A stretch of DNA of 63,974 nucleotides, the filler included, from Octopus bimaculoides (lineage: Eukaryota), in the NCBI RefSeq assembly GCF_001194135.2. It is 10 parts of 8 records of this genome, joined end to end, with 100 filler letters (N's around TTAATTAATTAA, not from the genome) between each part and the next. Parts side by side here need not be neighbours in the genome. Positions count along the whole stretch, not along the records: positions 14,688 to 25,338 come from NC_068983.1; 9 more parts are not named here. One strand, 5' to 3'. This document shows positions 7,550-25,439 of this stretch, in pieces. The position numbers and the translations under genes were made by a program. The first letter of the stretch is position 1; each line of letters starts with the position of its first letter. Under the pieces are notes generated by a model. It searched no databases, was not told the DNA's origin, and saw nothing but the letters and a program-made list of their open reading frames with translations.

Positions 7550-10500
7550 CACACAAACACACACATATACCCACACTCATATGTTTTCTTATATATATAT
7601 ATATATATATATACTGCCCAAGGAAATTTAGTAATCAACTTTCAGTCAACATATAACTTATTAGTTTTGCATTGCATTTCTGAGCACTATTTGCTTTTCA
7701 ACCAACTGAGCCTAGATGACTTGCAGCACATGTCTTATATTACATCACTGAAGCTGTAAAATTCGCTTTGGCACCAAAACAGCCTACAATCTATGTATTA
7801 CGGAGGCACATACTATTGTCTATCTGGTCAGAACCAAGCAGAAATGAAAATTCAATCATAGATACCTTAATAACAGATAGATAATTTATTGTAGCAGGAA
7901 GTCACCAAATGTAAGCTTGATACAGGCAAATTTTGTGAATTACACAGAAAAGATGACGCAATGGTCCTAATAAATATGTTTAAACTATTACAATAAACGA
8001 TGAAGAGAAAGTAATCCTCCTGAATGTTTCTCTGATTATGATGAGCAATCGATGTTGGCAATAAAACAAAATTCAAGATCATTATAATGATATTTTATTC
8101 AGTGGCATTGTGCCCCAAAATTGATGAAATCATTGAAATGGAAATGACTTGAAGGGAGGCATTTTGTTAGACTGTGAAGAGTTGAAGATATTTTTCTACA
8201 TCTTCATGGTGTACTACTGTAATTCACTCTATACAGGAAAATTCTGACACAGATAACCACTACTTTACATGAATTTTAATGATTATATTGGAAGTAACCA
8301 TGTTAGCCTTCATAGGTTTCAAAAAACAAGTATTGAAAATTAAACACTGAAATTTTAAATCTAATGCACAAGATGAAATTTACAGAACAGTCAAATGTTA
8401 TAATGAACATTTACATTGTTTCAAAATGACTCAGAATACACTACGTAACTCTATGTTAGTTAATGGACAATAAACTCTCAGAGATCATTAATTGAAGATA
8501 ATTAATACAATAATACTTTTGACCAAATATATAACGTCTTCCTCAGTTCTAAAATCCACAAACCTGTCAAATGTACTACGTAAATAAATAGAAAGTGTAA
8601 TGTATATTCATTGTCTGATATCAAAACCAAGTAGATTACTCTTATAAAAGAAATAGAAAATGATACATATGTAAATATGAATGAATATATATCTATATGA
8701 ATATATATATACAAGCAAAGACATACACACAAGTATGTGAGTGAGCCAGTAACTAATAAAATGACAAAGATTTTTTGTTGTTATGTATGTGGAAAGAGGT
8801 TGTAGATTGAATTAGATAACTTTTGAAATGTTTATTAGATTGTAATTGTACCAATGATTGCTTGAAAATGTATGTTTTGTAAGGGTATGTTTTTCCATTT
8901 TTTAGCACACACATAACTAAGGGCATGAATGAGATACTATGAACACTAGTAAATTATATTTATATTTATTGCAGAATTTCATCTTCTCTGCAACATTAGA
9001 GGATGCAAACTTAGTTTATATTAACTGTAAAATCTATGAGTGTACAAGGAAGGCATTAGGGTCTTGGATAGACTCTAGAAACTATTATAGGTCTTCAATA
9101 TGACAGATCTTTGGATAAAAGTAAATCAGGTTAGTTACTTATCTCATGTGGCCACATTTGGTGTCAAAACTATTAACAGTGCAATAAAAACCGATCATGA
9201 TGCAGACAACGTTGTATGCTGTACATATCTGAGCAGTATATATATTATTATATGTTATATCATATTTTGTGAACAACAATGTCATTTGGTTACAGGTTTC
9301 TAATAGGTTAATCATTGATCTCCAGCATTTATGATGGTGAGACTGACAGATTGTCAGGTGGAGCAATAACACATGGGATTCTTGTTCAAAAGCACCAGTT
9401 TATTGGTTTTCTCACCAATATTTACAGGTTTTATTGATGCACACTGGCAAAAGATGTACACACACACACAGAGACAGATAAGCCAAGAAGCTGAGAAAGC
9501 TCCTGGGTATTACAAATGTTGCAAGACGTTGACCCTGTTGAAATAGCTCTATGAGAAGATAACACCTGTATATGTGCTATGATGTGAATATATGCTATGG
9601 TGTTGAAAAGGAAATGTAGTTGTAGTAAAATGTACTCAGACCATTGCAGAGTTGAGAAAAATAGCAATAATTTGTAAAGTTTTGCTAAACTTAGATATGA
9701 AATACAGAACTAAATGAAATCAAATTGATCTGTAAACCTATTGAATTGATGTCAGTTATGGAAAACATAAATACAAAGATAATAACACACACACATACAC
9801 AGATTAAGACATGACTTGCTTGGTAAAAGTGATGTATTGAAATCTAAAAGTATTCCTTAGACAGAACATATGAATAAATATATAAGAGTATGTTGGGTGA
9901 ACCATAAGCTAATACCTTCAAAAAAGACAGAACTCAATACATTGACATAATGAACAATGTTTTTGAGAATAAGAAGGTTCAATACCTCAAAGTGGACAGT
10001 GGTTTCATTCCATACTGAGCAAGAATATTCAGACATGTCACTAGTCATTATGTGGCTTTGAAAATTCCAATTCTTACAACATCAATACAACACACACACA
10101 CACACATACAAATGTATGTGTGTGTGTGAGTACAAATTTGTGCACAAAGAATGCAGACAAACATACATGCATGTATGTATGCATGCATGTATATATGTAT
10201 GCATGTATACACACACACATATCTTTTGCTTGTTTCAATCAATGGACAACTGCTATGCTGGGGAACTACATTGAAGATTTCTTTTTAGTTGAACAAATTC
10301 ATGCCAGAACTTATTTATAATTCTAGTATTTATTCTATCAGACTCTTATGTCAAACTGTTAAGTTATAGGGACGTAAAAAGACCAACACCAATTTTCAAG
10401 TGGTGCTGGGACTAATATTGGCACAAACACACACACATATCTACACACACATGCAAACATACACACACATCTACTGGATTTCCACACAGTTTCATCTCAC

Positions 10501-11039
10501 AGATTCACCCACAAAGCCTATAGCAGAAGACATATGCATAATGTACCATGCAGTAGAGTTAAATCCAAAGATATATAGTTGAAAAGTGAGATTCTTGACC
10601 ATACAGCTATGCAGTGTGTGTGTGTGTGTGTGTGTATGAAATAAATGTAGTAGAGTATGCAGTTGTAGAGTATGCTGATCATTAACTCATGGAATTAACA
10701 ACTAAGAAGCCGAATGTTCTACCAACATAGAAAACTTTCATGTAATTTTCAGGTAGAATCAGTATGAAACAGCATGGGAGTGTGACAAACTTGGACCTTT
10801 GGATTACAATTTAAATTCATTTGATGGGCTTCTGCACAATTTCTATTGGCTCAATTCACTCACAAGCCTGAGGGCAACTTTATGATACAATACTCTCAAG
10901 ATCTCGTACTGTGACATCAAACATCAGTCCTTATGATAGTGAAGCAAGCTTCTGAACCATTTAAACATGGTGTACCTAAATATAATATATATCCATCCTT
11001 CCATATATATTTATACACAGACATATGCATATAGAGCCA

Positions 11040-11775
11040 GTATGCTCCGTTGGATGTGTAATGTCAATGTGAATACCCGTCAGAGTGTAAGTATCTTGAG
11101 AGAAAAGCTGAACATTAGAAGCATCAGTTGTGGTGTGCAAGAGAGACGATTGCACTGGTATGGACATGTGGTGAGAATGGATGAGGATAGCTGCGTGAAA
11201 AAGTGCCACACCCTAACAGCTGAGGGAACCCGTGGAAGAGGTAGGCCCAGGAAGACCTGGGCTGAGGTGGTGAGGCAAGACCTTCGTACATTGGGCCTCA
11301 CCGAGGCGATGACTACTGACCGAGACCTTTGGAAATGTGCTGTGCGTGAGAAGACCCGGCAAGCCAAGTAAGATCGTTGCCAGTGCCCCTGGACTNNNNN
11401 NNNNNNNNNNNNNNNNNNNNNNNNNNNNNNNNNNNNNNNNNNNNNNNNNNNNNNNNNNNNNNNNNNNNNNNNNNNNNNNNNNNNNNNNNNNNNNNNNNNN
11501 NNNNNNNNNNNNNNNNNNNNNNNNNNNNNNNNNNNNNNNNNNNNNNNNNNNNNNNGTGGCACATAAAAGACACCATTTCGAGCGTGACCGTTTTCGTGTG
11601 GGTGACACGTAAAAGCACCCACTACACTCTCTGAGTGGTTGGCGTTAGGAAGGGCATCCAAATTAGATTGGAGCCTGGTGTTGCCATCCGGTTTCACCAG
11701 TCCTCAGTCAAATCGTCCAACCCATGCTAGCATGGAAAGCGGACGTTAAACGATGATGATGATGATGATGATGAT
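11040..11775 (+). mobile_element. RTE-clade LINE 3' end (C-terminus of ORF plus 3' UTR with (GAT)n tail), interrupted by a gap
   Basis: The ORF track gives MLRWMCNV...LREKLNIRSISCGVQERRLHWYGHVVRMDEDSCVKKC...RGRGRPRKTW, the typical RTE C-terminus. It ends in catggaaagcggacgttaaacgatgatgat. Confidence 0.9.
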
Positions 11776-13489: not shown

Positions 13490-16084
13490 TATATATATAT
13501 AATCAGCTTTAACTGTACTATATCAGTGCTTAGAAAAGTAATAGACCCTACAAGCTTATTCAAACCTCATATCTTTCATAATTTGAGTTATTGTATTACC
13601 AAGTCCCCTACAGAGTAACTGCTATCTATCTCTTTCTTTCTACCCCGTCTCTCTATCACTTTCTCTTTCTCTTTCTGTAATAATTTTACTGGTATGAATT
13701 GTAAATTCTATCTTGATGAATTTCACATTTGTTTTTCAAGTAATTTATCAGACACTCAGGTCCCAACTGTTTACTAGTGTCCCAGAACCCACCTTAATGT
13801 ATATTATTTTTTATATTTATGCAATTAAAATATTAGCCTGTAATTGATAAATACTCCCACATACACACGCACATTCATACACACACACACACATGCACAA
13901 TGTATGCATACGTACATACATATATATATTATTTCTCATCTAATCCTTCCTTTCAGTTTTTGTAATACCCGATCTCAGTAACATCAAAGTTGCATTTCCT
14001 CAGGAAATATATTCATGTATACTGTGGAAACAAGATGAGGTATTTGACTATTGGACATTGACCGTTTAAAACCATTGCAGTGCATTGCAATAGGAAAGTA
14101 CACTTAATTCTATGTCACAAGTTACTTAGCAGTAAACTAGAGATACATTGCTTTAGAAAATAATTGCAAATGAATATCCTTTTATTGATGGATAGCCATG
14201 GATATAAAGCATCTGTTGACTGTATTTATGACACAAGTGTTTGGTACATATGTATGGATGTACATATAATAGTAGTAAGAAGGCAAAGAATGCAGAACTA
14301 ATTTTATGTTCAATTTGTTGCCATCTAGTCATTTTTCTGCCATAGTATATGTAAAATTACATTATTCAAAACGTTGATTTATTAATAAAGTTCATATAAA
14401 GTTCATATGGCAGGGATTTAGAAAAGCACAAGGCAAATTGAATAACGTACAGAGTTTCCTTCATGGGTCTAGCATGGATTAATATATATGTGCTTGTGGA
14501 TGGGTGTGTGTATATATATATTGTTGTATTTGGGGATGGTCATGTTGCCAGTTTAACCAATATATATGTATATATATATATATATATNNNNNNNNNNNNN
14601 NNNNNNNNNNNNNNNNNNNNNNNNNNNNNNNTTAATTAATTAANNNNNNNNNNNNNNNNNNNNNNNNNNNNNNNNNNNNNNNNNNNNTATATATATATAT
14701 ATATCGTTGCTATTATGCAAAAGTGTCATTGCTTTTCAGAAAACGAAAAAATAGTTTTACCATTCCATTTCCTTTTACATTAGCAACAGTTTCAGCTTAA
14801 CAATAATATTTTGTTGGGTGCATAAAATCATAACTCCATGTATGTATGATATTTTCAGTCAGAAATATTTTTGCAAAACTGTCGTATGTGGGACTTACTA
14901 CAGTTTTGAAAAATGCTAAACCGTGTACTACACTTTGACAATTTTCATACCTTGGCATCTGAAGCAGCTAGAGATACGATAGTTTGACCAAAAGAACCGG
15001 CCACTGGAAGCAAAATTAGAAATAGTGAAAAAATGCATTTGGTCAAATTTAGACATACGACAGTTTAACATAATATCAACGATATGGATTAGAAGCGCTA
15101 AGCAGTGATGTATATAAACTTATGGATTCGAATACGATTCAGACATATTCGAACCCATAAGAAAACCATCCCTTGCATTTTGTCATGGAGAAAAATTCTC
15201 GCTGTAGACAAAAAGATGTAAACATACCAAGACAGTCGGGGCCGCCTTATACTCAGATCGATGGATGCATGCATTTCGGAGGGGAAGTTGGTGGAATAGT
15301 CGATTCCATTGAATCAATAAATGACTGGTACCATATTATTGACACCGGTGGAATGAAATGTTAAGTTGACATAGATGGAATTTGAACTCAGAAAGTAAAT
15401 AACTGGAAGAAAAATCCTATGATGGTTGTCCTACCTCAAGCAATCTTTGCCAGAAAATAAAGACGATGAATTGTTGTTCACTTATTTCATAAATAGTATT
15501 TGGACAACTGAACAATCAATTTTTTTAATGTTTACTTTTTCAGAAAATATTCTGAAAATTTTAGAAATAAAATTTACTTATTTATTGTTAATTTTGTTTT
15601 AATGGTTTGGTCTGGGTGAAAGGACTGAGTCTATGTTTTTTTAGGTCCTCTGAGACCGATGAGATCGTCGCAATTAATACCAACGACTTCTCAGATTGAC
15701 TTAGTAGTTGGGGAGAAATCAGAGAAGAAATATGACGCAAAACTGAGAAAACGTCTATAAATTTTGTTGAGAAAAGCACGCAGGTTGACTGGGAGTTAAC
15801 TCCCCAGGGATACTTGCTATTTATAAAAAAAAGAAACTGTTAAAAAACTCGATGTAGTCAAACAAGAAATTTTAAATCAATCCCTTCAAGCACAGCCAGA
15901 CTGGCATTTTGGCAGTTTTTGTTATACCACAGCACCATCTTGACGTGTTCATCTTTAAATTAAAGCGAGTCATCTCATCATAATTTACAATGAATCTTTT
16001 GCAATGTTTCAAACGCCAGAGTAAGAAATAATTCTTTCTCCTATAGGTACAAGGCCTGAAATTTTGGGGATTTCACCTTACCAG

Positions 16085-16250
16085 AATAAGATATGATTTC
16101 AAATCTTGGCACAAGGATAGCAATTTCGGAGGGAGAGGATAAGTTGATTACATCAACCCCAATGTTCAACTGTTACTTATTTCATCGATCTTGAAAGAAT
16201 AAAAGGCAAAGTCGACTTCGGCGGAATTTGAACTTAGAACGTAAAGACCA
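16085..16250 (-). mobile_element. tRNA-derived SINE (family B)
   Basis: Contains aaaggcaaagtcgacttcggcggaatttgaacttagaacgt, shared with copies at 15300-15420, 19770-19930, 19953-20070, 24302-24508 and 49860-50005. Confidence 0.8.
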
Positions 16251-18068
16251 TCAGCAACAACGATGAATCACCAAAACCCCAAAATGATCCCCTTCTGTGC
16301 TATGTTGCTCATATGTTAAGTTAGATAACTACATCAACGACAAAGAATTAAAAGGTAAATCGTGCTCAGTCTGACGATGAATAGTTACTTCATCGTATAA
16401 AACTATAAGTGAGGAGAAATGCATTATATTACAATATTAATTTCTTTATGTTCTTATATCATTACATTACTTACGTATTTGAACGTTAATTCTGCGTCTG
16501 GGTAACCGGTATTTAAACGCCAACGAGTATTTCCTGTTATGTACAGCAAAAAGAGAAACAGTAGGTCTTGTTACGGCCGTGGGTTAGCCTTGTCAGCTCT
16601 AATCCAGTAGATTTATGATCGAAGACATTTCAGTTTTTAGAGGCATTGTGTAATTTGTATTGATATTATTAAATGTACCCTTCCATCTTTAAAGCAGTAG
16701 GATGTGATTTGCAGGAGAATTGGTTGCTATTTCTAGCAGATTAAGTAACAGCGTAGAAGCTCACACATTGATTCGATTAACTTTTCCATCAGCTGTATCT
16801 CCAGGATTATGGGACCCCGGACAACAACTAACATTCGAGATGCCGTTATTCACTGAGACCTGCGTCTTAGTGACCTCCCATCCCTTTCAGACATGACGAA
16901 TGTTAGTTGGTGAGGTCAGGCTGACACGGATTAAAATTAAGTAGGTTCAACTATTTGACATGAATTATTTGTCACAGTTTGTTAATTTGAAATTACGCTG
17001 GCAGAACATAGCAAAAAGCACAAATTCTTGGTATTTCTTGTAAATATATTGTTGCTGTGTTCTACTTCCAAATACATTATTTCATTGTTCCAAAATATCA
17101 CATTTCACAATAATATATTACTTCAACATATTTGGTGTTTTATTGTTATTTGCTTATGTTGTTTTGGTAGTTATTTTAGTTATCATTTAGTTCTCTTATT
17201 TACACTTTTTGTCCCTGTAGTGTATTTCTTAGTAGCCGCAGAATTAGTGAGTTTGCAGTCACTGTTGAAAATGTCTTGTAATCAAATATTAAGAACTACC
17301 TAGGCTTATATTGAAAAGCTGTATCGCAAGGTAGTTTTAAACTGCTTTGTTATAAACCGTTGTTGGATTTCTAATTCATTTTCATATGGTTTCTTTAATA
17401 GATGTTGACAAAATTGCACCATCGGATACGTTTATGTACAACATTATCCACAGCTTGGTAAGTTCTTTATCTGGGAATTACTAGGTTAATTTTCTGGAAA
17501 ATATCTTCTCGCAGAGAAACTCCATTTAAAATGCTTGTCAATATTTGTTCTTGCTTTATAATATATTTCCATCACATTGAGACATAATAATGTTTGCAGT
17601 AAAGGTTTAAAGATCTTTGAGTGATGTATAAGTGCTTTTAGTTAGTGTTACATTTCGAAATAAAATCTGGAAAGGGTTTAGTCGATCAAAGTTTCGTAGA
17701 AAAGTAGTAATGTGCATCATTAGGAGACGGAATCTATAAGCTATTCTGAATCGATGGATCATTATACTTAACTTTTTCCAAATAAAATTATATATATTGA
17801 ACTTTATTAAAATAAATCCTGCTTGACATTGAATGATATGTTATAATATTCTAATTTATGGAATTTAACAATTTTAATAAAATATCCTTAGGTTTAACAT
17901 TTTGGTAGACACTAAAAAATTCTGTTAGAGAAATACTAGAACTTTCCATTTTAAGCCAATATAGGATTGTAGTAAATTAAGATATAGACTTTGTAATTGC
18001 ATGTTAAATAAATGGGTTAAATCTAACGATAGTTGTGTTTTTTTCATGACGACACCAAAGCATTGCAA

Positions 18069-18090
18069 TGACGTCATATAGAATTATAGC
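18069..18090 (+). promoter_or_regulatory. Full CRE palindrome TGACGTCA followed by a TATA-like tatagaattatag, ~190 bp upstream of the EB-like ATG
   Basis: TGACGTCA at 18069-18076, immediately followed by tatagaattatagcg. A promoter role is inferred from position only. Confidence 0.35.
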
Positions 18091-18264
18091 GTAAGTGGCA
18101 CAAGAATACAATGGATTCTTGGTTCGAATGAACAATCAGTACAGAATTATAGAATAGAACTAAGGCTTCTCGGGAGTATTATATTTCTTGTTTCTGGTAC
18201 TAAGATATGATTCTTTCGTAACTTTGTCGTTTAATCGTATATAATATATACAGAGAAGAGAACC

Positions 18265-19395
18265 ATGAAAGTACTGGATCCTCCGTCCGTTGCTATCGTC
18301 AGCCAAGAAAAACTCGTTGAATGGTTTCGAAAAACCGTTTCTACTCAGATTCATTCCGTTAAAGATTTAGCGAGTGGCTATGAATTTTGCAAATGTATGT
18401 TTATGCTTTTCCCAACTGCGCTCAATTTAAGCAAAATTAAATCACAAAACCTAACCATGTATGATCGACACATGAACTACAAACAACTCCAAGCGGCCTT
18501 TACATATATCAACCTGAATAAAGAAATACCGATACAGAAGTTAATGGAAGGTAACCTAGCAGAGAACTATCATTTTGGACTTTGGTTTAAAGCTTTTTAT
18601 GAAATTAACTGTCCTCTACAGACACCTAAAGAAGATCTAGTGACTGAGTGTCGAAAAATTAAGGGTGTAGGTTGTGGTGATATACTGAAAGCTCCGGCAG
18701 AACACGAACTGAAAAGTTGGCCCAAATCAGGAAATACAAAATTTATCAAACGGACAGTTAATGAGTGTAAAATCATAGAAAACGAGTGTAGACTTATAGA
18801 CGAGTGTAAAGTCGTGGACAATGAGGTTCAAACGGACTTTTATGAGTATTTGCAATTTGAAGAAATCTTTAATAAGATGAACAATCAGAACGCTATAAGT
18901 ACCGAGCTAGCTGAAGCTAACGAGTTTAACCAAATGATTATAGAAACCCTAAAAAGTGACAACATGAGCTTAATAACTGAAAATAAAGAGTTAGACATGG
19001 ACAATAAGGCACTTGCCATGGAAAAAAATAGCTTGGAATTTAGTGTCAATCTATTACTCCAGCGCAATGAAGAGCTGGAGAACGCGAATTCCACACTAAT
19101 TCAACAGATTGAAAATCTTGAAGAAGGTTATTTGAATTTGTCAGAAACAAACAAAGAAATAAATATACGTAACCGTGAATTACAAGTCCATTATGAGGAT
19201 TTAAACTTGCATTCTCAAATCTATAAAAAGGTGCTAGACTGTTCAAATATGGAAGCTAATCTTTTTTTCAATAAACTGCAAAGTATTGACAGACTTTGCC
19301 GTAATGCATCGAGCAATCGTTTGAGGAAATTAATAGTTTCTATATTGAACGAAACGAAATATCAACCAGGTTGTATGTCAGTCGCTTTACCTTAG
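18265..19395 (+). CDS. MAPRE1-like: Intronless EB1/RP (MAPRE) family microtubule end-binding-like protein, 376 aa, divergent
   Basis: Residues ~13-115 align with the EB-type CH domain: SQEKLVEWF..DLASGYEFCKCMFMLFP..LSKIK..NYKQLQAAF..KEIPIQKLMEGNLAENYHFGLWFKAFYE, vs EB1 [68 protein letters not shown]. Residues ~330-363 EANLFFNKLQSIDRLC..LIVSILNET match the EBH motif ERDFYFGKLRNIELIC..RIVDILYAT. There is an upstream in-frame TAA (18232), the start context is accATG, and the ORF has no stops or frameshifts. Confidence 0.9.
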   Translation: MKVLDPPSVAIVSQEKLVEWFRKTVSTQIHSVKDLASGYEFCKCMFMLFPTALNLSKIKSQNLTMYDRHMNYKQLQAAFTYINLNKEIPIQKLMEGNLAENYHFGLWFKAFYEINCPLQTPKEDLVTECRKIKGVGCGDILKAPAEHELKSWPKSGNTKFIKRTVNECKIIENECRLIDECKVVDNEVQTDFYEYLQFEEIFNKMNNQNAISTELAEANEFNQMIIETLKSDNMSLITENKELDMDNKALAMEKNSLEFSVNLLLQRNEELENANSTLIQQIENLEEGYLNLSETNKEINIRNRELQVHYEDLNLHSQIYKKVLDCSNMEANLFFNKLQSIDRLCRNASSNRLRKLIVSILNETKYQPGCMSVALP

Positions 19396-19468
19396 CAATA
19401 TATATAGATATATATATTCAGTTTTTTTTCCCTTTTCGTATTTGTAGAAATAACTAAGTGAAATGGGC

Positions 19469-19474
19469 AATAAA
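19469..19474 (+). promoter_or_regulatory. Candidate polyadenylation signal of the EB-like gene
   Basis: AATAAA ~75 nt after the TAG stop, followed by T-rich sequence. Confidence 0.45.
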
Positions 19475-19769
19475 ACTATTAAATTTTCCAATCATAAATC
19501 GAACTATTCTTTTAAGTTTTCTTTTAAAATGCTTACGTCCTTTTAATTATTATCTTCTAGATTTATTTTCAGTCTGTCAGGTCCTTCAATTATTAGCTGA
19601 TTTACAACTTAATTACTTTCATTTTTAGTATGTATCCTGCCAGTATATCCCTGTAATAGAAGCCCTTAGCTCTGTCATATTTATGTTTGAAACTTTTTTG
19701 TTGAATAGCGTGTTAAAATAAATTATATACATCTACGTAAAGGGCAGTTTCAGCGGTAGTAAGAGTGCG

Positions 19770-20070
19770 AAGGGCGGGCAGAGAAAATGTGATTCGGTAT
19801 TTTTCCCAGCTCTCTACGTTCTGTTTCAAATTTGCTTTTCATCCTTTCAGGGTCGATAAGATAAATGACCAATCAAGTACTGAGAACGACGTACTCGACT
19901 AACTGCAAAATTGCTGGCCTTGTGTCTAAATAAAAAAAACTATTGTTAATGTTGGCAAGCTGGCAGAATCGTTAGATCACTGGGTAAATTACTTTGCAAT
20001 ATTTATTCTAGCTCTTTGCGTCCTGAGATCAAATCACATCAGGACCAACATTGCCTTTCACTCTTTCTAG
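19770..20070 (+). mobile_element. Two adjacent decayed family B SINE copies
   Basis: ttcaaatttgcttttcatcctttcagggtcgataag... and ggcaagctggcagaatcgttag...gcctttcactctttc. Confidence 0.7.
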
Positions 20071-21467
20071 TTTGAATATTTTTGATTATAGGTGCGTTCG
20101 ATCATGATAGCCTCAGGCAGTGACGGCTTGTAGATAGAATTAGTTGGGGTGCTGCTTCAGAAAGTTTTTAGCCGTTGTTTTAATATTGTGTAAAAGGAAA
20201 CAAACATATAAAAAGAAAATTTATACATAAACTTGATCGATTCACGCTTTAGCCACTGTAGTGTGCTTAATTTGTTTACTAAACACTGCCGCGAATTCCC
20301 CCTTGCTTTTCAAAAATCCCCCCTAAATCTCAAACGGTGGGGGTGCCCTATTTTTAAAATCCTGGCAGCAGGACAATAATCTAATCATACACTTTATCAC
20401 ATTCAAGAATANNNNNNNNNNCGTTCACGCAGTGCTAGTGTCGTTCACGCAGTACTCTCTCTCTCTCTTTCTCTCGGATATGTAAGCATGCGCACAACAG
20501 CCAAACACTGCGTCGCTGCAACTGTGAAGCGCACAGTTTTATACAAGGATTTTTGCGTTTTTTTCATAAACTGATGGATGGTTACTGACATTAAGCTTAA
20601 GGATTATATAATGTACAAGTATAAAGAAAGAATTAAAGAAAAAAAGAACTCATTATATTGAATGTTATTGATAATATCGAGTGGAAATAGGGGACGCTGC
20701 AGTTCCGCGGTGCTTATACACGAGCCACCACTAACCTTGGATTTAACAAAAACAACAACAACACGCAAATTCATATGCAGCTAGCATCATATTCACAGCT
20801 ACTCAACTGTTCCAGCAACAAGAAAACCTGGCTCTATAACAACAGTTCAAAATTCCTGACAGAAATAACATACGCAAATAGTGAAATGATAGAATCCGCG
20901 TAAATAATTATTGATTGCTAATAGATATTAGATATGTTGATACTGAATTATCTATCATCTATTCTAAGCAATTTAATTTTCTTCAAGTGAACAAGTATTG
21001 TGCCTAGTACATTGATTCTTCTGTCACTCCTTGGGAGGAAACAGTAACGAGAAAAGAAAAAAAAAACGAAAATGTCCCTAATTGTCTTCCATATTTGCCG
21101 TGAAAATAAAAATATTGCTTACTGGCGCTTAATGTTTTTATGTTTTTTTCCTTAGAAGAATTTCAGGCCTTGTGCTCAATGCTAGAAACAACTACTTTTT
21201 CTGGGTTGCAGTCCATTGCGTGAAATATTTAATCCATCACTCAACTTAATACAACTACTTGGTCCATGGATGTTTTTAGCGAAACCCAGAAAGCGTTTGA
21301 ATCAGGTTTTTATATTTTTAGTTGTCTTTACACTAAATATGTGAACTAACTTATTCATTGTTTTGATGTGGATATAATTTTTTAATTATTTAATTTCTAA
21401 TTCATTTATATTTTTCTATTCCAAAAATTTCTTTAGTGTACCCCTGCAAGTATAGTGAAGGTTATGC

Positions 21468-21530
21468 TTCACTGAGGAGATTAGAATAATACTGAAACAT
21501 GAAAGGAGTTGTTTCCCGTACGTGTTTGGA
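21468..21530 (+). ncRNA. Degenerate type I hammerhead ribozyme motif (PLE/retrozyme-type)
   Basis: Elements in order: stem I ttca; core CTGAGGA (21472-21478); imperfect stem II atta/taat; GAAA (21494-21497); stem III acatg/cgtgt; GTT triplet; stem I partner tgga. Confidence 0.45.
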
Positions 21531-21956
21531 AAATCAAAATAATATTAGTCACAATTTTGTTTTATTTTTTCTTTGCATAATTATTTTGAGTACATTAATG
21601 CATAAAATAATCAACTACCTTGTAATTACAAACTTGATTAAAAAAAGTTAATTAATAGTTTTCAGAATAAGAAAATTAAAGTGTCATATTGACATATCAA
21701 ATCGTAAAATTACGTATAAAGAATTGGTAAGATTTTACTGCAAGTAAGATGAAGTAAGACGGGGAAATCACATTGATGAGACTGTGTTGATATAAAAACG
21801 GATATAGTGTGGTCATGAACATTACTCTTTGTGTCTGCATGCATAAAACAGGCGTCTGTCTGTGTCTGTCTGTCTGTATGTATATATGTATGCATGTATG
21901 TATGTATGTATGTATGTATGTAAGTGGGTATGTATGTATGTATCTATGTTTGTATG

Positions 21957-21987
<31 letters not shown>

Positions 21988-22028
21988 GTGAGTATGTATG
22001 TATGTTTGTATGTATGTATGTATACATN

Positions 22029-22385
22029 NNNNNNNNNATTCGTGGTCATAGGATCGCGGTTTCGATTCCCAGACCGGGCGTTGTGAGTGTTTAATGAGTG
22101 AAAACATCTAAAGCTCCACGAGGTTCCGGCAGGGGATGGTGTCGAACCCTGCTGTACTCTTTCACCACAACTTTCTCGCACTCTTACTTCCTGTTTCTGT
22201 TGTGCCTGTAATTCAAAGGGTCAGCCTTGTCACACAGTGTCACGCTGAATATCCCCGAGAACTACGTTAAGGGTATACGTGTCTGTGGAGTGCTCAGCCA
22301 GTTGCACGTTAATTTCAAGAGCAGGCTGTTCCGTTGATCGGATCAACTGGAACCCTCGACGTCGTAAGCGACAGAGTACCAACAT
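22029..22385 (+). mobile_element. tRNA-derived SINE (family C)
   Basis: B-box-like ggtttcgattccc, followed by the body cagccttgtcacacagtgtcacgctgaat...gatcggatcaactggaaccctcg, which is shared with 62570-62860. Confidence 0.75.
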
Positions 22386-22681
22386 TATTCAAAAGAGATT
22401 TGGCTACTATTTCTGTCAAGTCAACGACCACATAAGAGGCTCCCTTCTTGGCTCGTGCGTGTGTATGTTTATAAGAAGAGTACTATAAAATGTTCATTCA
22501 CACCACGCCACATGGACATAATTGTTTACGAAATGTTGCTTGAACAGAAGCCGGATGATAAAATATGCAGCCAAAGTAGACGCTTCCGTTGTGTTGAGTG
22601 CGACGCTTGTGTCGACATTGACAAGAAGCGGTTTTGAAATGGATTACGCATTGCTTCAATCAACAAGTTTTTATTTTATCA

Positions 22682-22772
22682 CTAGCAGAAATACCCGGCG
22701 TTGCCCAGGTTAAAGAGAATAATGAAATCTAAAAACGCCGTCTAGACTACGCATCATCTTTATATAGAGAGA
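22682..22772 (-). mobile_element. Minimal 91-bp non-autonomous Helitron
   Basis: The minus strand reads A|TCTCTCTATATAAAGATG...AACCTGGGCAACGCCGGGTATTTCTGCTAG|T: 5'-TC, subterminal GC hairpin, CTAG-3', inserted between A and T with no TSD. Confidence 0.8.
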
Positions 22773-23919
22773 TGTATATACACACACGTACCCAAACACA
22801 CGTATATATATGTATATCAAAAAAAATATATGAAAGTCAATGAAGTTTCGTAAAAGAAGGTGATCATGTACATACTTTCTTGCTGTTGTGATTATAACAC
22901 CTCGTTGTAAACAATGTTCCTTGTTTTCCCTTGTGGAGCATATACAAATAGGGTCTTTTTGCTGCCCACTCTTGAGCAGCCAACATACAGTTGTCCATGT
23001 GAGAAGCAGGGCTCTTCCANNNNNNNNNNNNNNNNNNNNNNNNNNNNNNNNNNNNNNNNNNNNNNNNNNNNNNNNNNNNNNNNNNNNNNNNNNNNNNNNN
23101 NNNNNNNNNNNNNNNNNNNNNNNNNNNNNNNNNNNNNNNNNNNNNNNNNNNNNNNNNNNNNNNNNNNNNNNNNNNNNNNNNNNNNNNNNNNNNNNNNNNN
23201 NNNNNNNNNNNNNNNNNNNNNNNNNNNNNNNNNNNNNNNNNNNNNNNNNNNNNNNNNNNNNNNNNNNNNNNNNNNNNNNNNNNNNNNNNNNNNNNNNNNN
23301 NNNNNNNNNNNNNNNNNNNNNNNNNNNNNNNNNNNNNNNNNNNNNNNNNNNNNNNNNNNNNNNNNNNNNNNNNNNNNNNNNNNNNNNNNNNNNNNNNNNN
23401 NNNNNNNNNNNNNNNNNNNNNNNNNNNNNNNNNNNNNNNNNNNNNNNNNNNNNNNNNNNNNNNNNNNNNNNNNNNNNNNNNNNNNNNNNNNNNNNNNNNN
23501 NNNNNNNNNNNNNNNNNNNNNNNNNNNNNNNNNNNNNNNNNNNNNNNNNNNNNNNNNNNNNNNNNNNNNNNNNNNNNNNNNNNNNNNNNNNNNNNNNNNN
23601 NNNNNNNNNNNNNNNNNNNNNNNNNNNNNNNNNNNNNNNNNNNNNNNNNNNNNNNNNNNNNNNNNNNNNNNNNNNNNNNNNNNNNNNNNNNNNNNNNNNN
23701 NNNNNNNNNNNNNNNNNNNNNNNNNNNNNNNNNNNNNNNNNNNNNNNNNNNNNNNNNNNNNNNNNNNNNNNNNNNNNNNNNNNNNNNNNNNNNNNNNNNN
23801 NNNNNNNNNNNNNTTTGACTAAAACACAACTGGAACCCTAAGTAAGGCATGTGTAAAATTTGAATGAAATTGGTTGCGTAGTTCTCGAGTTTTAGGGATT
23901 CACACACACAGACAGACAA

Positions 23920-23991
<72 letters not shown>

Positions 23992-24012
23992 TCTCATTTT
24001 TATATATATAGA
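22773..24012 (-). mobile_element. Internally deleted Helitron retaining the C-terminus of the Rep-helicase (PIF1) ORF
   Basis: The 5' end is A|TCTATATATATAAAAATGAGAATG at 24012. Minus-strand 22892-23018 translates EEPCFSHGQLYVGCSRVGSKKTLFVYAPQGKTRNIVYNEVL*, the conserved Helitron PIF1 terminal motif. The middle is a gap. Confidence 0.85.
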
Positions 24013-24283
24013 TTAATGATTACATCCAGCTAAACTTTTGCTCAGTCAAAGTTAAACGCCTTTCTCTGCATCCTCATTGCACAAAAAGCGCTAGAAATTG
24101 CAATTATAACGATTATAACAACATGCATAGAGACAGATTCAGCTGTTGTCGGTATCATAAATTAGGATTACGTTTAGGACTAAAATTGATGGTTAACTCT
24201 GCAAATGTCGAAAAACTTTCTTCGCGTGCAAGCAAAATTATTTATTACTGTTGTATTCAGTGCCCCAAGATCCAGTCTTTGTT

Positions 24284-24546
24284 GCGGGGTGGTGACTTGT
24301 GTTATTTCTTTACTACCCACAAGGGGCTACACACAGAGGGGACAAACAAGGACAGACAAACGGATTAAGTCGTATTTATTTAATCGACCGTGAAAGGATG
24401 AAAGGCAAAGTCGACCTCGGCGGAATTTGAACTCAGAACGTAGCGGCAGACTAAATTCCGCTAAGCATTTCGTCCGGCGTGCTAACGTTTCTGCCGGCTC
24501 ACCGCCTTAAAAGTCACCACCCCAGCTCGCGGGGTGGTGACTTGTG
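24284..24546 (-). mobile_element. Family B SINE with 18-bp target-site duplication
   Basis: gcggggtggtgacttgtg at both 24284-24301 and 24529-24546, flanking a minus-strand SINE whose 5' end (aaggcggtgagccggcagaaacg) is at ~24508. Confidence 0.85.
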
Positions 24547-25129
24547 TGTTTCAATGTTCCTCAGAGCTATGTCAGTAGAGTGAAAGCTCTTGGTAGGACC
24601 TCTCGTGCTGGACAGGTCAAAGGTTAGGGGCTAAATTAATATGGACTACCTCTTCACAGTGGGGAAAAAAATGGTTTGCGTTGGATCAACACCCCTATTA
24701 AGAAAAAAGCAAAGTTACATGAGCTTCGATGATGATTTAATGCCAACAAGCCCTGGAAGATGAAGACTTTCCCTTGGGAAAACATATGATGTGGTGCAGC
24801 AAAATTAGAGCTGAAAAGCAGGGATGCAACTGGTGAGAAGCAGAAAAGAGAACCCGGAGTCAAGAACAATGAAGGAAAGTCGTCAAAGGCCTTTGTTCCT
24901 TTGGAATTAAAGGGATTAAATGAAACGATTGTTGTATCCAGCCATTGTACATAATAGTTGAACACAGGTACAATACATCTGATAGATGGACTCCTTCAGT
25001 TTCGTTCAATTATCAAATTTTACTAATAAAGCTTGGATCGACCCGTGTTATAGTAGAAAGCGCTTGTCTATGTTGCTGTACAGTAGGATTGGGTCCGGAA
25101 CCGCGTAATTGTGAAGTCGGCTTCTTAAA

Positions 25130-25320
25130 TAGACGGTCGTGTCTACTCCACATTTCGAGGGAGTAGATGAACAGCCGACAACTGTTGAAGAGTCATTCTT
25201 TATGTTACTTGACTTGTTTTCCTTTTGTTTCTCCCGTTGTTCACATACCCATGTTTGGTTTCGTAATTCATGTTGTTTTCGTATTTCATGTTGTTTACGT
25301 TTTGTGACGTCCTGTACCCA
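25130..25320. repeat. Dispersed repeat ending ...ttttgtgacgtcctgtaccc (related inverted copies at ~50775-50900 and ~59370-59450)
   Basis: The motif gggtacaggac..aaaacg/tgtaaa..catgaaa is shared by the three loci; origin unassigned. Confidence 0.6.
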
Positions 25321-25439
25321 TATATGCATATATATATANNNNNNNNNNNNNNNNNNNNNNNNNNNNNNNNNNNNNNNNNNNNTTAATTAATTAANNNNNN
25401 NNNNNNNNNNNNNNNNNNNNNNNNNNNNNNNNNNNNNNG

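What the first reader, a model, noticed from the sequence alone, without database searches (positions are those of the whole stretch)
18265..19395. Intact, highly remodelled intronless EB1-family gene, probably a retrogene nested in an ARFGEF3 intron
Seen: an uninterrupted 376-codon ORF, the only long clean ORF in a window where every TE ORF carries stops or frameshifts, with an EB-type CH domain and an EBH-like motif. Known: canonical animal MAPRE genes are multi-exon and strongly conserved, and end in an acidic EEY/F tail that recruits CAP-Gly proteins (CLIP-170, p150glued). Seen: this protein is very divergent, lacks that tail and ends in a hydrophobic QPGCMSVALP. Inference: it is a retroposed, neofunctionalised paralogue that may bind microtubules but has lost or changed +TIP partner recruitment. 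Only the last two ARFGEF3 exons appear in 52 kb, so it most likely sits inside a huge intron of that gene on the same strand. A lineage-specific (for example sperm-tail/manchette or neural) EB variant is the best candidate here for an undescribed system.
Basis: partly seen in the sequence, partly recalled or inferred. Interest (0 to 1): 0.85.

Follow-up and report, generated by a model that had tools for sequence, protein, structure and literature searches.

The report
Divergent intronless EB1-like octopus gene
This is a real, evolutionarily constrained Octopus bimaculoides gene for an unusual relative of the microtubule end-binding protein EB1; it is one of a little-noticed family of intronless EB-like genes found so far only in cephalopods, and it is not a young retrocopy sitting in an ARFGEF3 intron.

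Summary
The 376-codon ORF at 18265-19395 (+) is real and intact. It is the only genuine long ORF within 10 kb on either side in Octopus bimaculoides chromosome CM046603.1.

The protein has an EB-type CH domain (E about 2e-18; model within 1.0 A of EB1). After it come a disordered acidic linker, a 125-170-residue heptad helix, a degenerate EBH motif, and no EEY/F tail.

Intact orthologues exist in O. vulgaris/O. sinensis (94% identical) and Argonauta hians (63%). dN/dS is about 0.2 overall and about 0.1 in the CH, coiled-coil and EBH parts. It is therefore a functional gene.

It belongs to a separate clade of divergent EB-like proteins (NJ bootstrap 80/100). Every member with a named source is a coleoid cephalopod (Octopus, Argonauta, Sepia), and all six members checked have intronless coding sequences. 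Any retroposition is therefore ancient and happened at the level of the family. No poly(A) remnant or target-site duplication is present.

The ARFGEF3 nesting claim is an artefact of joined pieces. The hydrophobic tail is not conserved outside Octopus.

About 200 bp upstream is conserved down to Argonauta. This block starts at a perfect CRE palindrome, which recurs upstream of 5 of 8 paralogue lineages.

Expression could not be tested. The closest functional precedent is Drosophila Mst27D.

The parts
18045..18264 (+). Conserved proximal promoter / 5' UTR block (-220..-1)
   Evidence: 97.3% identical between O. bimaculoides and O. vulgaris, against 93-95% farther upstream and 95.6% in the ORF. 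It is the only non-coding stretch still alignable with Argonauta (about 79%), although dS is about 1.
18069..18076 (.). Perfect CRE palindrome TGACGTCA at -196, with a TGACG half-site at 18047-18051
   Evidence: Invariant in O. bimaculoides, O. vulgaris and Argonauta; the conserved block starts here. The same 8-mer lies within 600 nt upstream of 5 of 8 paralogue lineages, against 2 sites in about 85 kb of other cephalopod DNA held.
18177..18186 (+). TATA-like TATTATATTT (-88..-79), a candidate only
   Evidence: Read from the sequence; kept as AATATAATATTT in Argonauta. The transcription start is not mapped.
18265..19395 (+). Single-exon coding sequence, 376 codons plus TAG
   Evidence: called as a gene in GCA_001194135.2. 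dN/dS 0.21 against O. vulgaris and 0.19 against Argonauta.
18298..18612 (+). EB-type calponin-homology domain (aa 12-116)
   Evidence: E 2e-18 to EB1/EB3; pLDDT about 90; Foldseek top hits are EB1/EB3 CH domains; dN/dS 0.09-0.11.
18619..18840 (+). Disordered, acidic, fast-evolving linker (aa 119-192)
   Evidence: pLDDT below 50; net charge -3 for the aa 121-205 bin; dN/dS 0.46-0.84 for that bin, with length differences from Argonauta.
18761..18825 (+). Three copies of an 18-21-nt repeat in the linker (ECKIIEN / ECRLID / ECKVVDN)
   Evidence: the repeat finder families D2 and D5. Two of the Cys are Tyr in O. vulgaris; Argonauta has a longer, different array.
18880..19302 (+). Long coiled-coil helix (aa about 206-346)
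   Evidence: AlphaFold predicts a single helix 177-346, with pLDDT above 90 for 220-330. The heptad register is unbroken from about 220 to 346. dN/dS is about 0.10. aa 255-370 are nearly identical between Octopus and Argonauta (alignment).
19249..19347 (+). Degenerate EB-homology (EBH) motif, helix-loop-helix (aa 329-361)
   Evidence: PF03271 E 0.0048, below the cut-off. The family profile hits EB1 C-terminal structures at E 2e-5. The model has a loop at 347-350 and a helix at 351-361. MEANLFFNKLQSIDRLCRN aligns to EB1 KERDFYFGKLRNIELICQE.
19348..19392 (+). C-terminal tail (aa 362-376): conserved TKYQP, then an Octopus-specific GCMSVALP; no EEY/F
   Evidence: pLDDT below 50 for 368-376.
19398..19417 (.). 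(TA)n microsatellite directly after the stop codon
   Evidence: Short here, but hundreds of bases long at the same place in O. vulgaris/O. sinensis and Argonauta. It is not a poly(A) tract.
19469..19474 (+). AATAAA, candidate polyadenylation signal 74 nt after the stop
   Evidence: Read from the sequence. The same GGGCAATAAAACTATTAAATTTT lies beyond the (TA)n in O. vulgaris. Usage is not tested.

Best explanation
The ORF is a functional single-exon gene of Octopus bimaculoides. It encodes a divergent member of the EB (MAPRE) family and belongs to a clade of intronless EB-like paralogues whose named members are all coleoid cephalopods.

Shown here: the domain order is an EB-type CH domain, a disordered acidic linker, a very long heptad helix, a degenerate EBH helix-loop-helix, and a short tail without EEY/F. 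The three structured parts are under purifying selection. Intact orthologues exist in Octopus and Argonauta. A conserved upstream block starts at a CRE.

Inferred: the protein forms a parallel coiled-coil homodimer that presents two CH domains to microtubules, as EB proteins do. Because it lacks the EEY/F tail, it cannot recruit CAP-Gly proteins (CLIP-170, p150glued). Pocket positions are changed (EB1 F216/Y217/R222/Y247 become L/F/Q/N), and a clade-specific motif ILN[EQ]TKYxP replaces ILYATDEGF. Its C-terminus therefore probably binds partners other than the canonical SxIP set. Several basic or nucleotide-sensing CH positions are also changed (EB1 K100 to N, Q102 to A, K66 to L), so binding along the lattice or bundling is at least as likely as comet-like tip tracking. 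This would resemble Drosophila Mst27D.

Transcription probably starts from the gene's own CRE-containing promoter. Tissue and partners are unknown.
For: Gene reality and constraint:
- ORF.
- Identical 376-aa orthologue in O. vulgaris and O. sinensis and a 386-codon contiguous ORF in Argonauta.
- dN/dS by NG86 is 0.21 and 0.19 overall (YN00 0.28-0.34); CH 0.09-0.11, coil about 0.10, EBH 0.13-0.14, linker 0.46-0.84.

Family membership:
- CH E 2e-18; Foldseek match to EB1/EB3 CH.
- EBH supported by the family profile.

Architecture:
- AlphaFold model with pLDDT about 90 for CH and above 90 for helix 220-330.
- Unbroken heptad register.
- CH net charge and pI like EB1 (+1.7, pI 8.4); EB1 K89 is kept as K86.

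Cephalopod clade:
- Tree and bootstrap 80/100.
- Named members only from Octopus, Argonauta and Sepia/Acanthosepion.
- Six of six checked coding sequences are intronless.

Own promoter:
-.

Precedent:
- Mst27D is a retroposed, testis-specific, diverged EB1 relative. It homodimerises, binds along microtubules, bundles them and binds Nup358 through its C-terminal part (PMC10359004).
Against: - No expression data could be obtained. Contigs that carry paralogues are genomic, not transcripts.
- Neither dimerisation nor microtubule binding is tested.
- The roles I assign to EB1 K89, K100, Q102, Y217, R222 and Y247 come from my own knowledge of the EB1 literature, not from a tool result.
- The EBH match of this protein alone is below Pfam's threshold.
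- The canonical octopus EB1 was not retrieved, so the relation to the parent gene is not shown.
- The tree is a neighbour-joining tree of one 129-column domain. Many clade members come from unnamed assemblies, so 'cephalopod-specific' rests on the named ones only.
Confidence: 0.7

Rival explanations
1. One reading: this locus is itself a retrocopy of the canonical multi-exon MAPRE gene, inserted into a huge ARFGEF3 intron and then neofunctionalised.
For: The coding sequence has no intron. Canonical animal MAPRE genes are multi-exon (established knowledge). A precedent exists in flies: Mst27D arose by retroposition.
Against: - No poly(A) remnant; a (TA)n microsatellite follows the stop in three species. 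No credible target-site duplication.
- A conserved CRE-bearing upstream block is shared in kind with paralogues, and a retrocopy would not bring its promoter along.
- All six checked clade members are intronless. In Argonauta the orthologue lies 5.5 kb downstream of a paralogue on the same strand, which looks like DNA-level tandem duplication.
- The nearest relatives are other divergent paralogues, not canonical EB1.
- The ARFGEF3 exons came from an unrelated piece of a joined window. No host gene is recorded over 10 kb on either side in three annotations.
Confidence: 0.07
2. The protein acts mainly as a regulator of canonical EB proteins. It heterodimerises with EB1 through the coiled coil and EBH to form tail-less or single-tail dimers that tune +TIP recruitment, rather than working as an independent homodimer.
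For: The EBH core (LFFNKL..I..LC) is still recognisably EB-like. EB1/EB3 heterodimers are known (established knowledge). The Mst27D paper raises the possibility that the C-terminal fragment heterodimerises with endogenous Eb1.
Against: The coiled coil is three to four times longer than in EB1 and very different in sequence, which favours self-pairing. Full-length Mst27D did not co-precipitate Eb1. No data here bear on pairing.
Confidence: 0.12
3. The CH domain has been repurposed and no longer binds microtubules. The protein would then be a coiled-coil scaffold whose CH domain binds something else, as in Hook-type CH folds.
For: Positions equivalent to EB1 K59, K66, K83/R84, K98, K100, Q102 and K113 are not basic or not Gln. 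The linker is acidic instead of basic.
Against: Net charge and pI of the CH domain equal those of EB1, and K86 (EB1 K89) is nearly invariant in the clade. The closest folds are EB1/EB3/Bim1/Mal3, far ahead of Hook or actin-binding CH domains. dN/dS of the CH domain is about 0.1. The equally diverged Mst27D CH domain still binds microtubules once dimerised.
Confidence: 0.1
4. A chance ORF or a decaying pseudogene.
For: No transcript evidence could be obtained.
Against: The chance of an ORF this long is about 1e-13. The ORF is intact in four species despite saturated synonymous divergence, and dN/dS is about 0.2.
Confidence: 0.01

Closest known systems
Canonical EB1/EB3 (MAPRE1-3; Bim1, Mal3)
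   Same: N-terminal EB-type CH domain (30-34% identity, same fold, no gaps over 105 residues); the order CH, linker, coiled coil, EBH helix-loop-helix; basic CH domain; EB1 K89 equivalent kept.
   Different: Acidic, Cys/Asn/Glu-rich linker instead of a basic Ser/Pro-rich one. Coiled coil of about 125-170 residues instead of about 40. The EBH pocket positions are changed (FYF to LFF, R222 to Q, Y247 to N). ILYATDEGF...EEY is replaced by ILNETKYQP plus a short non-acidic tail. Intronless coding sequence.
Drosophila Mst27D and the other testis-specific fly EB1 paralogues (CG15306, CG32371, CG2955)
   Same: Lineage-specific, strongly diverged EB-family paralogues with a CH domain and a coiled coil and without the EEY tail. 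Mst27D is retroposed and intronless, forms homodimers and binds the microtubule lattice (PMC10359004). This is the best model for how the octopus protein may work.
   Different: Independent origin: the insect proteins sit with canonical EB1 or elsewhere in the tree, not in the cephalopod clade. Mst27D's similarity to EB1 is restricted to the CH domain, whereas the octopus protein keeps a recognisable EBH motif. Expression and partners of the octopus protein are unknown.
Other cephalopod EB-like paralogues (O. bimaculoides P0157; O. vulgaris P0014; Argonauta P0003, P0006, P0008, P0020; Sepia pharaonis P0159; unnamed P0004)
   Same: Same clade by CH domain (bootstrap 80/100). All members checked are intronless. 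Most have an EBH-like C-terminus. Most have a CRE palindrome upstream.
   Different: 25-48% identity in the CH domain. Lengths run from 275 to 695 aa. Some have two CH domains in one chain. Only P0004 shares the ILNxTKYxP end.

Membership tests
EB / MAPRE family | N-terminal EB-type calponin-homology domain | tested here: met
   phmmer E 2e-18 to EB3/EB1, aa 12-116. The AlphaFold model's best Foldseek hits are all EB1/EB3/Bim1/Mal3 CH domains, with rmsd 1.0 A to 2qjz. The generic Pfam CH model alone is below its cut-off (18.7 against 26 bits).
EB / MAPRE family | Coiled coil that dimerises the protein | tested here: inconclusive
   A confident single helix 177-346 and an unbroken heptad register 220-346. 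Dimerisation itself cannot be tested with a single-chain prediction.
EB / MAPRE family | EB-homology (EBH) domain, Pfam PF03271 | tested here: inconclusive
   This protein alone scores E 0.0048, 17.6 bits, below the cut-off of 27. The profile of family C-termini hits EB1 C-terminal structures at E 2e-5, and 5 of 7 relatives match PF03271. It is homologous but degenerate.
EB / MAPRE family | Acidic C-terminal EEY/F tail that binds CAP-Gly domains | tested here: not met
   The protein ends ...TKYQPGCMSVALP. O. vulgaris ends SMSVALP, Argonauta CGPLG, and P0004 ...SRKDYR.
EB / MAPRE family | Autonomous tracking of growing microtubule plus ends | not testable with these tools
   Needs live imaging or in vitro reconstitution.
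Processed retrogene | Intronless copy of an intron-containing parent gene | tested here: inconclusive
   The coding sequence is intronless, but so are all six checked clade members. The canonical octopus MAPRE gene was not retrieved, so the parent's structure was not examined.
Processed retrogene | Poly(A) tract remnant at the 3' end | tested here: not met
   (TA)n follows the stop in three species; there is no A-rich tract.
Processed retrogene | Flanking target-site duplications | tested here: not met
   Only AT-rich matches of 74-78% identity flank the ORF. None would be expected to survive at this age.
Processed retrogene | No inherited promoter (recruits a new one or uses the host's) | tested here: inconclusive
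   The gene has its own conserved CRE-bearing block, and the CRE recurs upstream of paralogues. This fits DNA-level duplication after an old founding event.
Gene nested in an ARFGEF3 intron | Host-gene exons on both sides on the same scaffold | not testable with these tools
   The ARFGEF3 exons lay in an unrelated piece of the joined window. No other called gene or real ORF lies within 10 kb on either side.

The most novel reading that the evidence does not exclude
Coleoid cephalopods carry a lineage-specific radiation of at least eight to ten intronless EB-like genes. This would have been founded by one ancient retroposition and spread by DNA duplication together with a CRE-type promoter. It includes single-chain forms with two CH domains in tandem. 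The family would form a specialised microtubule toolkit for one tissue programme, for example shaping of the long sperm nucleus by the manchette, or neuronal processes. The window gene would be its long-coiled-coil member with a new C-terminal docking motif (ILNETKYxP).
Probability: 0.3. Interest if true: 0.65.

Novelty: new variant of a known kind. Interest (0 to 1): 0.5.

Why it matters
EB proteins are the hub of the microtubule plus-end network, and their architecture is almost invariant from yeast to man. Lineage-specific, tail-less EB relatives are so far documented functionally only in Drosophila testis (Mst27D).

A second, independent and larger radiation in cephalopods would matter for two reasons. 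It would show that the CH-plus-coiled-coil module is repeatedly recruited for specialised microtubule arrays. It would also give cephalopod biology a set of candidate genes for sperm-head shaping or for the large nervous system.

The gene models already sit in public annotations as 'RP/EB family' or 'uncharacterized'. I found no paper that describes them.

The shared CRE palindrome offers a directly testable regulatory hypothesis.

Tried and rejected
- Logan contigs that carry paralogues (L005/L006, L011, L013-L019) looked like possible transcripts. They are colinear with the genome or end in microsatellites, so they are taken as genomic.
I suspect, but did not test, that coiled-coil words filled the cap. 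The CH-only profile search returned nothing at all, for no clear reason.
- Cluster look-ups of 30 representatives named only cephalopods inside the clade, and insects, fish, flatworms and a nematode outside it.
- The search for target-site duplications or poly(A) was negative.
- Rfam and tRNA scans of the piece found nothing. The other ORFs in the piece have no Pfam match.
- I considered a 5' UTR intron, because an invariant GCGTAAGTG lies just after the CRE and a TATACAG lies before the ATG. I rejected it as unsupported: a first exon would have to fit in under 40 conserved bases, and the acceptor is not conserved in Argonauta.
- I considered whether the spliced Argonauta C-terminus 'SITVSI' is the true homologue of Octopus 'SMSVALP'. 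The orthologous DNA reads CGPLG-stop, and the micro-exon looks like a homology-driven prediction.
- No SxIP or LxxPTPh motif is present in the protein itself.
Full report
**Observation**

The piece 14688-25338 contains one genuine long ORF, 18265-19395 on the + strand, of 376 codons. All other ORFs of 80 aa or more are read-throughs of N runs or short ORFs without any Pfam match.

An exact look-up places the ORF in Octopus bimaculoides assembly GCA_001194135.2, chromosome CM046603.1, near 29.58 Mb, where it is already called as a gene. Within 10 kb on either side of it there is no other real ORF of 100 aa or more. With 33-36% G+C, about 7.5% of random codons are stops, so an open stretch of 376 codons is not a chance event (about 2e-13 by my arithmetic).

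**What the protein is**

- **CH domain.** Against the sequences of solved structures, aa 12-116 align without a gap to residues 15-119 of human EB3 and EB1, at E about 2e-18. Bim1 and Mal3 follow.
- **Pfam on this protein alone.** The generic CH model and the EB1 C-terminal motif PF03271 (aa 332-361) both score below their curated cut-offs, at E 0.002 and 0.0048.
- **Structure model.** An AlphaFold2 model built on a 13-sequence family alignment gives these parts:
  - a confident CH domain (pLDDT about 90);
  - a disordered segment at 119-192;
  - one very long helix at 177-346 (pLDDT above 90 for 220-330);
  - a four-residue loop;
  - a short helix at 351-361;
  - a disordered tail.
- **Fold search.** Foldseek against the PDB returns EB1/EB3 CH domains as the first twelve hits (2qjz at 1.0 A rmsd over 106 columns). 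Hook, plastin and actinin CH domains are orders of magnitude weaker.
- **Coiled coil.** The heptad register of hydrophobic residues is unbroken from about residue 220 to 346. It runs straight into the EBH-like segment, as the EB1 coiled coil does.
- **EBH homology.** This is clear at family level. Relatives carry KRYFYEKLREIEKLC...SLRSSIKTVLY and KSYFYKKLDQIENLC...SLRASLKKILYEEG. These bridge EB1's RDFYFGKLRNIELIC...LQRIVDILYATDEGF and this protein's EANLFFNKLQSIDRLC...RLRKLIVSILNETKY. A profile of seven such C-termini hits EB1 C-terminal structures at E 2e-5 to 1e-3, and five of the seven match PF03271, best 2.5e-7.
- **Tail.** There is no EEY/F tail.

The protein therefore has the full EB domain order. 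It differs in having an acidic linker (net charge -3 for aa 121-205), a coiled coil three to four times longer than in EB1, a degenerate EBH and no CAP-Gly-binding tail.

**Is it functional?**

The big protein collection holds an identical 376-aa orthologue in O. vulgaris and O. sinensis (94% identical to the window protein) and an Argonauta hians orthologue at 63%. The Argonauta DNA has a contiguous 386-codon ORF.

| Comparison or region | dN/dS (Nei-Gojobori) | Note |
|---|---|---|
| O. bimaculoides vs O. vulgaris, whole ORF | 0.21 | dS 0.13; YN00 gives 0.34 |
| O. bimaculoides vs Argonauta, whole ORF | 0.19 | dS about 1.2, saturated; YN00 gives 0.28 |
| CH domain | 0.09-0.11 | |
| Coiled coil | about 0.10 | |
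| EBH and tail | 0.13-0.14 | |
| Linker | 0.46-0.84 | |

Residues 255-370 are almost unchanged between Octopus and Argonauta. The gene is under purifying selection on exactly the parts that the fold prediction marks as structured.

**Family context**

An exhaustive HMMER search of 1.84 billion cluster representatives found 937 relatives. After the Argonauta orthologue the best ones are a set of very divergent proteins, 30-41% identical over the matched stretches.

In a neighbour-joining tree of CH domains, the window protein groups with twenty such domains, apart from the rest of the EB family. This split is recovered in 80 of 100 bootstrap replicates, and the orthologue trio in 100.

Every clade member whose source carries a name is a coleoid cephalopod:
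- Argonauta hians: P0003, P0006, P0008, P0020;
- Octopus vulgaris: P0014;
- O. bimaculoides: P0157, on chromosome CM046616;
- Acanthosepion (Sepia) pharaonis: the P0024/P0159 cluster.

Named proteins outside the clade are canonical EB1 of insects, fish, flatworms and a nematode.

Apart from its orthologues, the window protein's nearest relative is P0004. This is a 559-aa protein from unnamed sequencing runs, and it shares the C-terminal ...SLRK.I.AILNQTKYHP.

The giant-squid genome paper lists a MAPRE1-like gene among the non-Hox genes inside the Hox cluster (PMC6962438). This fits scattered copies in decapodiforms too. I found no paper that describes this family.

**Retrogene?**

The coding sequence is intronless. 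So is every other clade member I could check, where gene length equals three times (residues plus one):

| Protein | Coding length (nt) | Residues |
|---|---|---|
| P0157 | 900 | 299 |
| P0014 | 1110 | 369 |
| P0008 | 918 | 305 |
| P0006 | 2088 | 695 |
| P0159 | 942 | 313 |

In Argonauta the orthologue lies 5.5 kb downstream of the paralogue P0006 on the same strand, which looks like a DNA-level tandem duplicate. No such neighbour lies within 10 kb in Octopus.

At the window locus nothing marks a retroposition. The stop codon is followed by a (TA)n microsatellite in all three species, not an A tract, and no credible target-site duplication flanks the ORF.

The most economical reading is that intron loss, plausibly by one retroposition, happened in the founder of the clade before octopods and decapodiforms split, and that the family then grew by DNA duplication. 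This locus predates the Octopus-Argonauta split. I could not retrieve the canonical octopus MAPRE gene, so the parent's structure was not examined.

**Promoter**

Between Octopus and Argonauta, alignable non-coding DNA is confined to about 200 bp directly upstream of the ATG. It begins at a perfect CRE palindrome, TGACGTCA (window 18069-18076, position -196), with a TGACG half-site 22 bp upstream.

Between the two Octopus species this block is 97.3% identical. That is more than the ORF (95.6%) and more than the DNA farther upstream (93-95%).

The same 8-mer lies within 600 nt upstream of the ATG in 5 of 8 independent paralogue lineages:
- this gene;
- Argonauta P0006;
- P0004;
- O. vulgaris P0014;
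- S. pharaonis P0159.

There is usually a second half-site 15-27 nt away.

The gene therefore appears to have its own promoter of a type shared by the family. Which factor uses it, and in which tissue, is unknown.

**The ARFGEF3 claim and the tail**

No host gene is recorded over 10 kb on either side in the annotations of O. bimaculoides, O. vulgaris or O. sinensis.

The orthologous Argonauta DNA reads CGPLG-stop, with TTA changed to TAA, and P0004 ends quite differently. The conserved feature is ILN[EQ]TKYxP, which replaces EB1's ILYATDEGF.

**How it probably works**

*Shown:* the domain order, the constraint, the conserved promoter block and the family context.

*Inferred from established knowledge of EB proteins and from Mst27D:*
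- The long heptad helix makes a parallel homodimer that pairs two CH domains. Pairing is what EB-type CH domains need for efficient microtubule binding.
- The CH domain keeps EB1-like charge (pI 8.4, net +1.7) and the K89 equivalent (K86, nearly invariant in the clade). It has lost several basic positions and the Gln at EB1 position 102 (N97, A99, L63). I know that Gln from the literature as lying close to the nucleotide-sensing contact. I therefore expect microtubule binding, but not necessarily comet-like tip tracking.
- Without EEY/F the protein cannot recruit CAP-Gly proteins.
- The pocket substitutions are F216 to L, Y217 to F, R222 to Q and Y247 to N (alignment; the residue roles are from my own knowledge). 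With the new conserved end motif, the C-terminus probably docks a different partner.

The best working model is Drosophila Mst27D. It is a retroposed, testis-specific EB1 relative that homodimerises, decorates and bundles microtubules, and binds Nup358 with its C-terminal part to shape the sperm nucleus (PMC10359004). Octopus spermatids do have a manchette (PMC3004946), but nothing here shows testis expression.

**Verdict**

It is wrong or unsupported on three points: the recent retrocopy, the ARFGEF3 nesting, and the conserved hydrophobic tail.

The more interesting result is at family level. There is an apparently undescribed clade of intronless EB-like genes with shared CRE-type upstream elements, whose named members are all coleoids. 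I rate this a new variant of a known kind, of moderate interest. Expression and biochemistry are the missing pieces.

Noticed in passing
window 18069-18076; L003:2048 and 9807; L005:863; L008:2858; L010:2475: A perfect CRE palindrome TGACGTCA, usually with a second half-site 15-27 nt away, lies within 600 nt upstream of the ATG in 5 of 8 paralogue lineages of the cephalopod EB-like family. Only 2 sites occur in about 85 kb of other cephalopod DNA held.
   Followed up: partly
proteins P0003 and P0010 (Argonauta hians), P0005 and P0019 (unnamed assemblies): Some relatives carry two EB-type CH domains in tandem in one polypeptide. P0003 and P0005 are inside the divergent clade; the P0010 and P0019 domains form a separate group next to it. 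I do not know this architecture from canonical EB proteins, which pair CH domains by dimerisation.
   Followed up: no
L003:2443-4530: In Argonauta a 695-aa intronless EB-like paralogue (P0006) with a very long coiled coil lies 5.5 kb upstream of the orthologue on the same strand. No counterpart lies within 10 kb upstream in O. bimaculoides, O. vulgaris or O. sinensis.
   Followed up: partly
L003:10001-11784: The Argonauta gene model P0002 removes a 93-nt in-frame 'intron' from the linker and adds a 20-nt 3' micro-exon (...SITVSI). A contiguous 386-codon ORF exists (10001-11161), so the model looks homology-driven.
   Followed up: partly
window 18761-18825: An 18-21-nt tandem repeat in the linker encodes ECKIIEN/ECRLID/ECKVVDN. 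Two of the Cys are Tyr in O. vulgaris, and Argonauta has a longer, different array. This is the fastest-evolving part of the gene.
   Followed up: partly
window 19398-19417; L001 about 11140-11350; L003 about 11200-11450: A (TA)n microsatellite sits immediately after the stop codon in all three species. It is about 20 nt here and hundreds of nt in O. vulgaris/O. sinensis and Argonauta.
   Followed up: no
window about 21.9 kb and 23.05-23.80 kb; 21863-22023; 23901-23990: Assembly gaps (runs of N) flanked by (TGTA)n and (CA)n microsatellites create artefactual long 'ORFs' on both strands.
   Followed up: yes
window about 16094-16248 and about 24302-24510: Two stretches of 150-200 bp match several dispersed copies, in both orientations, within the O. 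vulgaris and O. sinensis loci at 73-87% identity. They are probably SINE-like repeats.
   Followed up: no
L002:17985-18446 (O. sinensis, about 7 kb downstream of the gene): A called 153-aa ORF has weak helicase hits (PF02689, PF13538), perhaps a Helitron- or Pif1-like fragment. The only two CRE palindromes outside EB-like upstream regions lie at or just downstream of it in L002 (18412, 19241) and at the matching places in L001.
   Followed up: no
literature, PMC6962438: The giant squid genome paper lists a MAPRE1-like gene among the non-Hox genes inside the Hox cluster. It may be another member of this scattered family.
   Followed up: no
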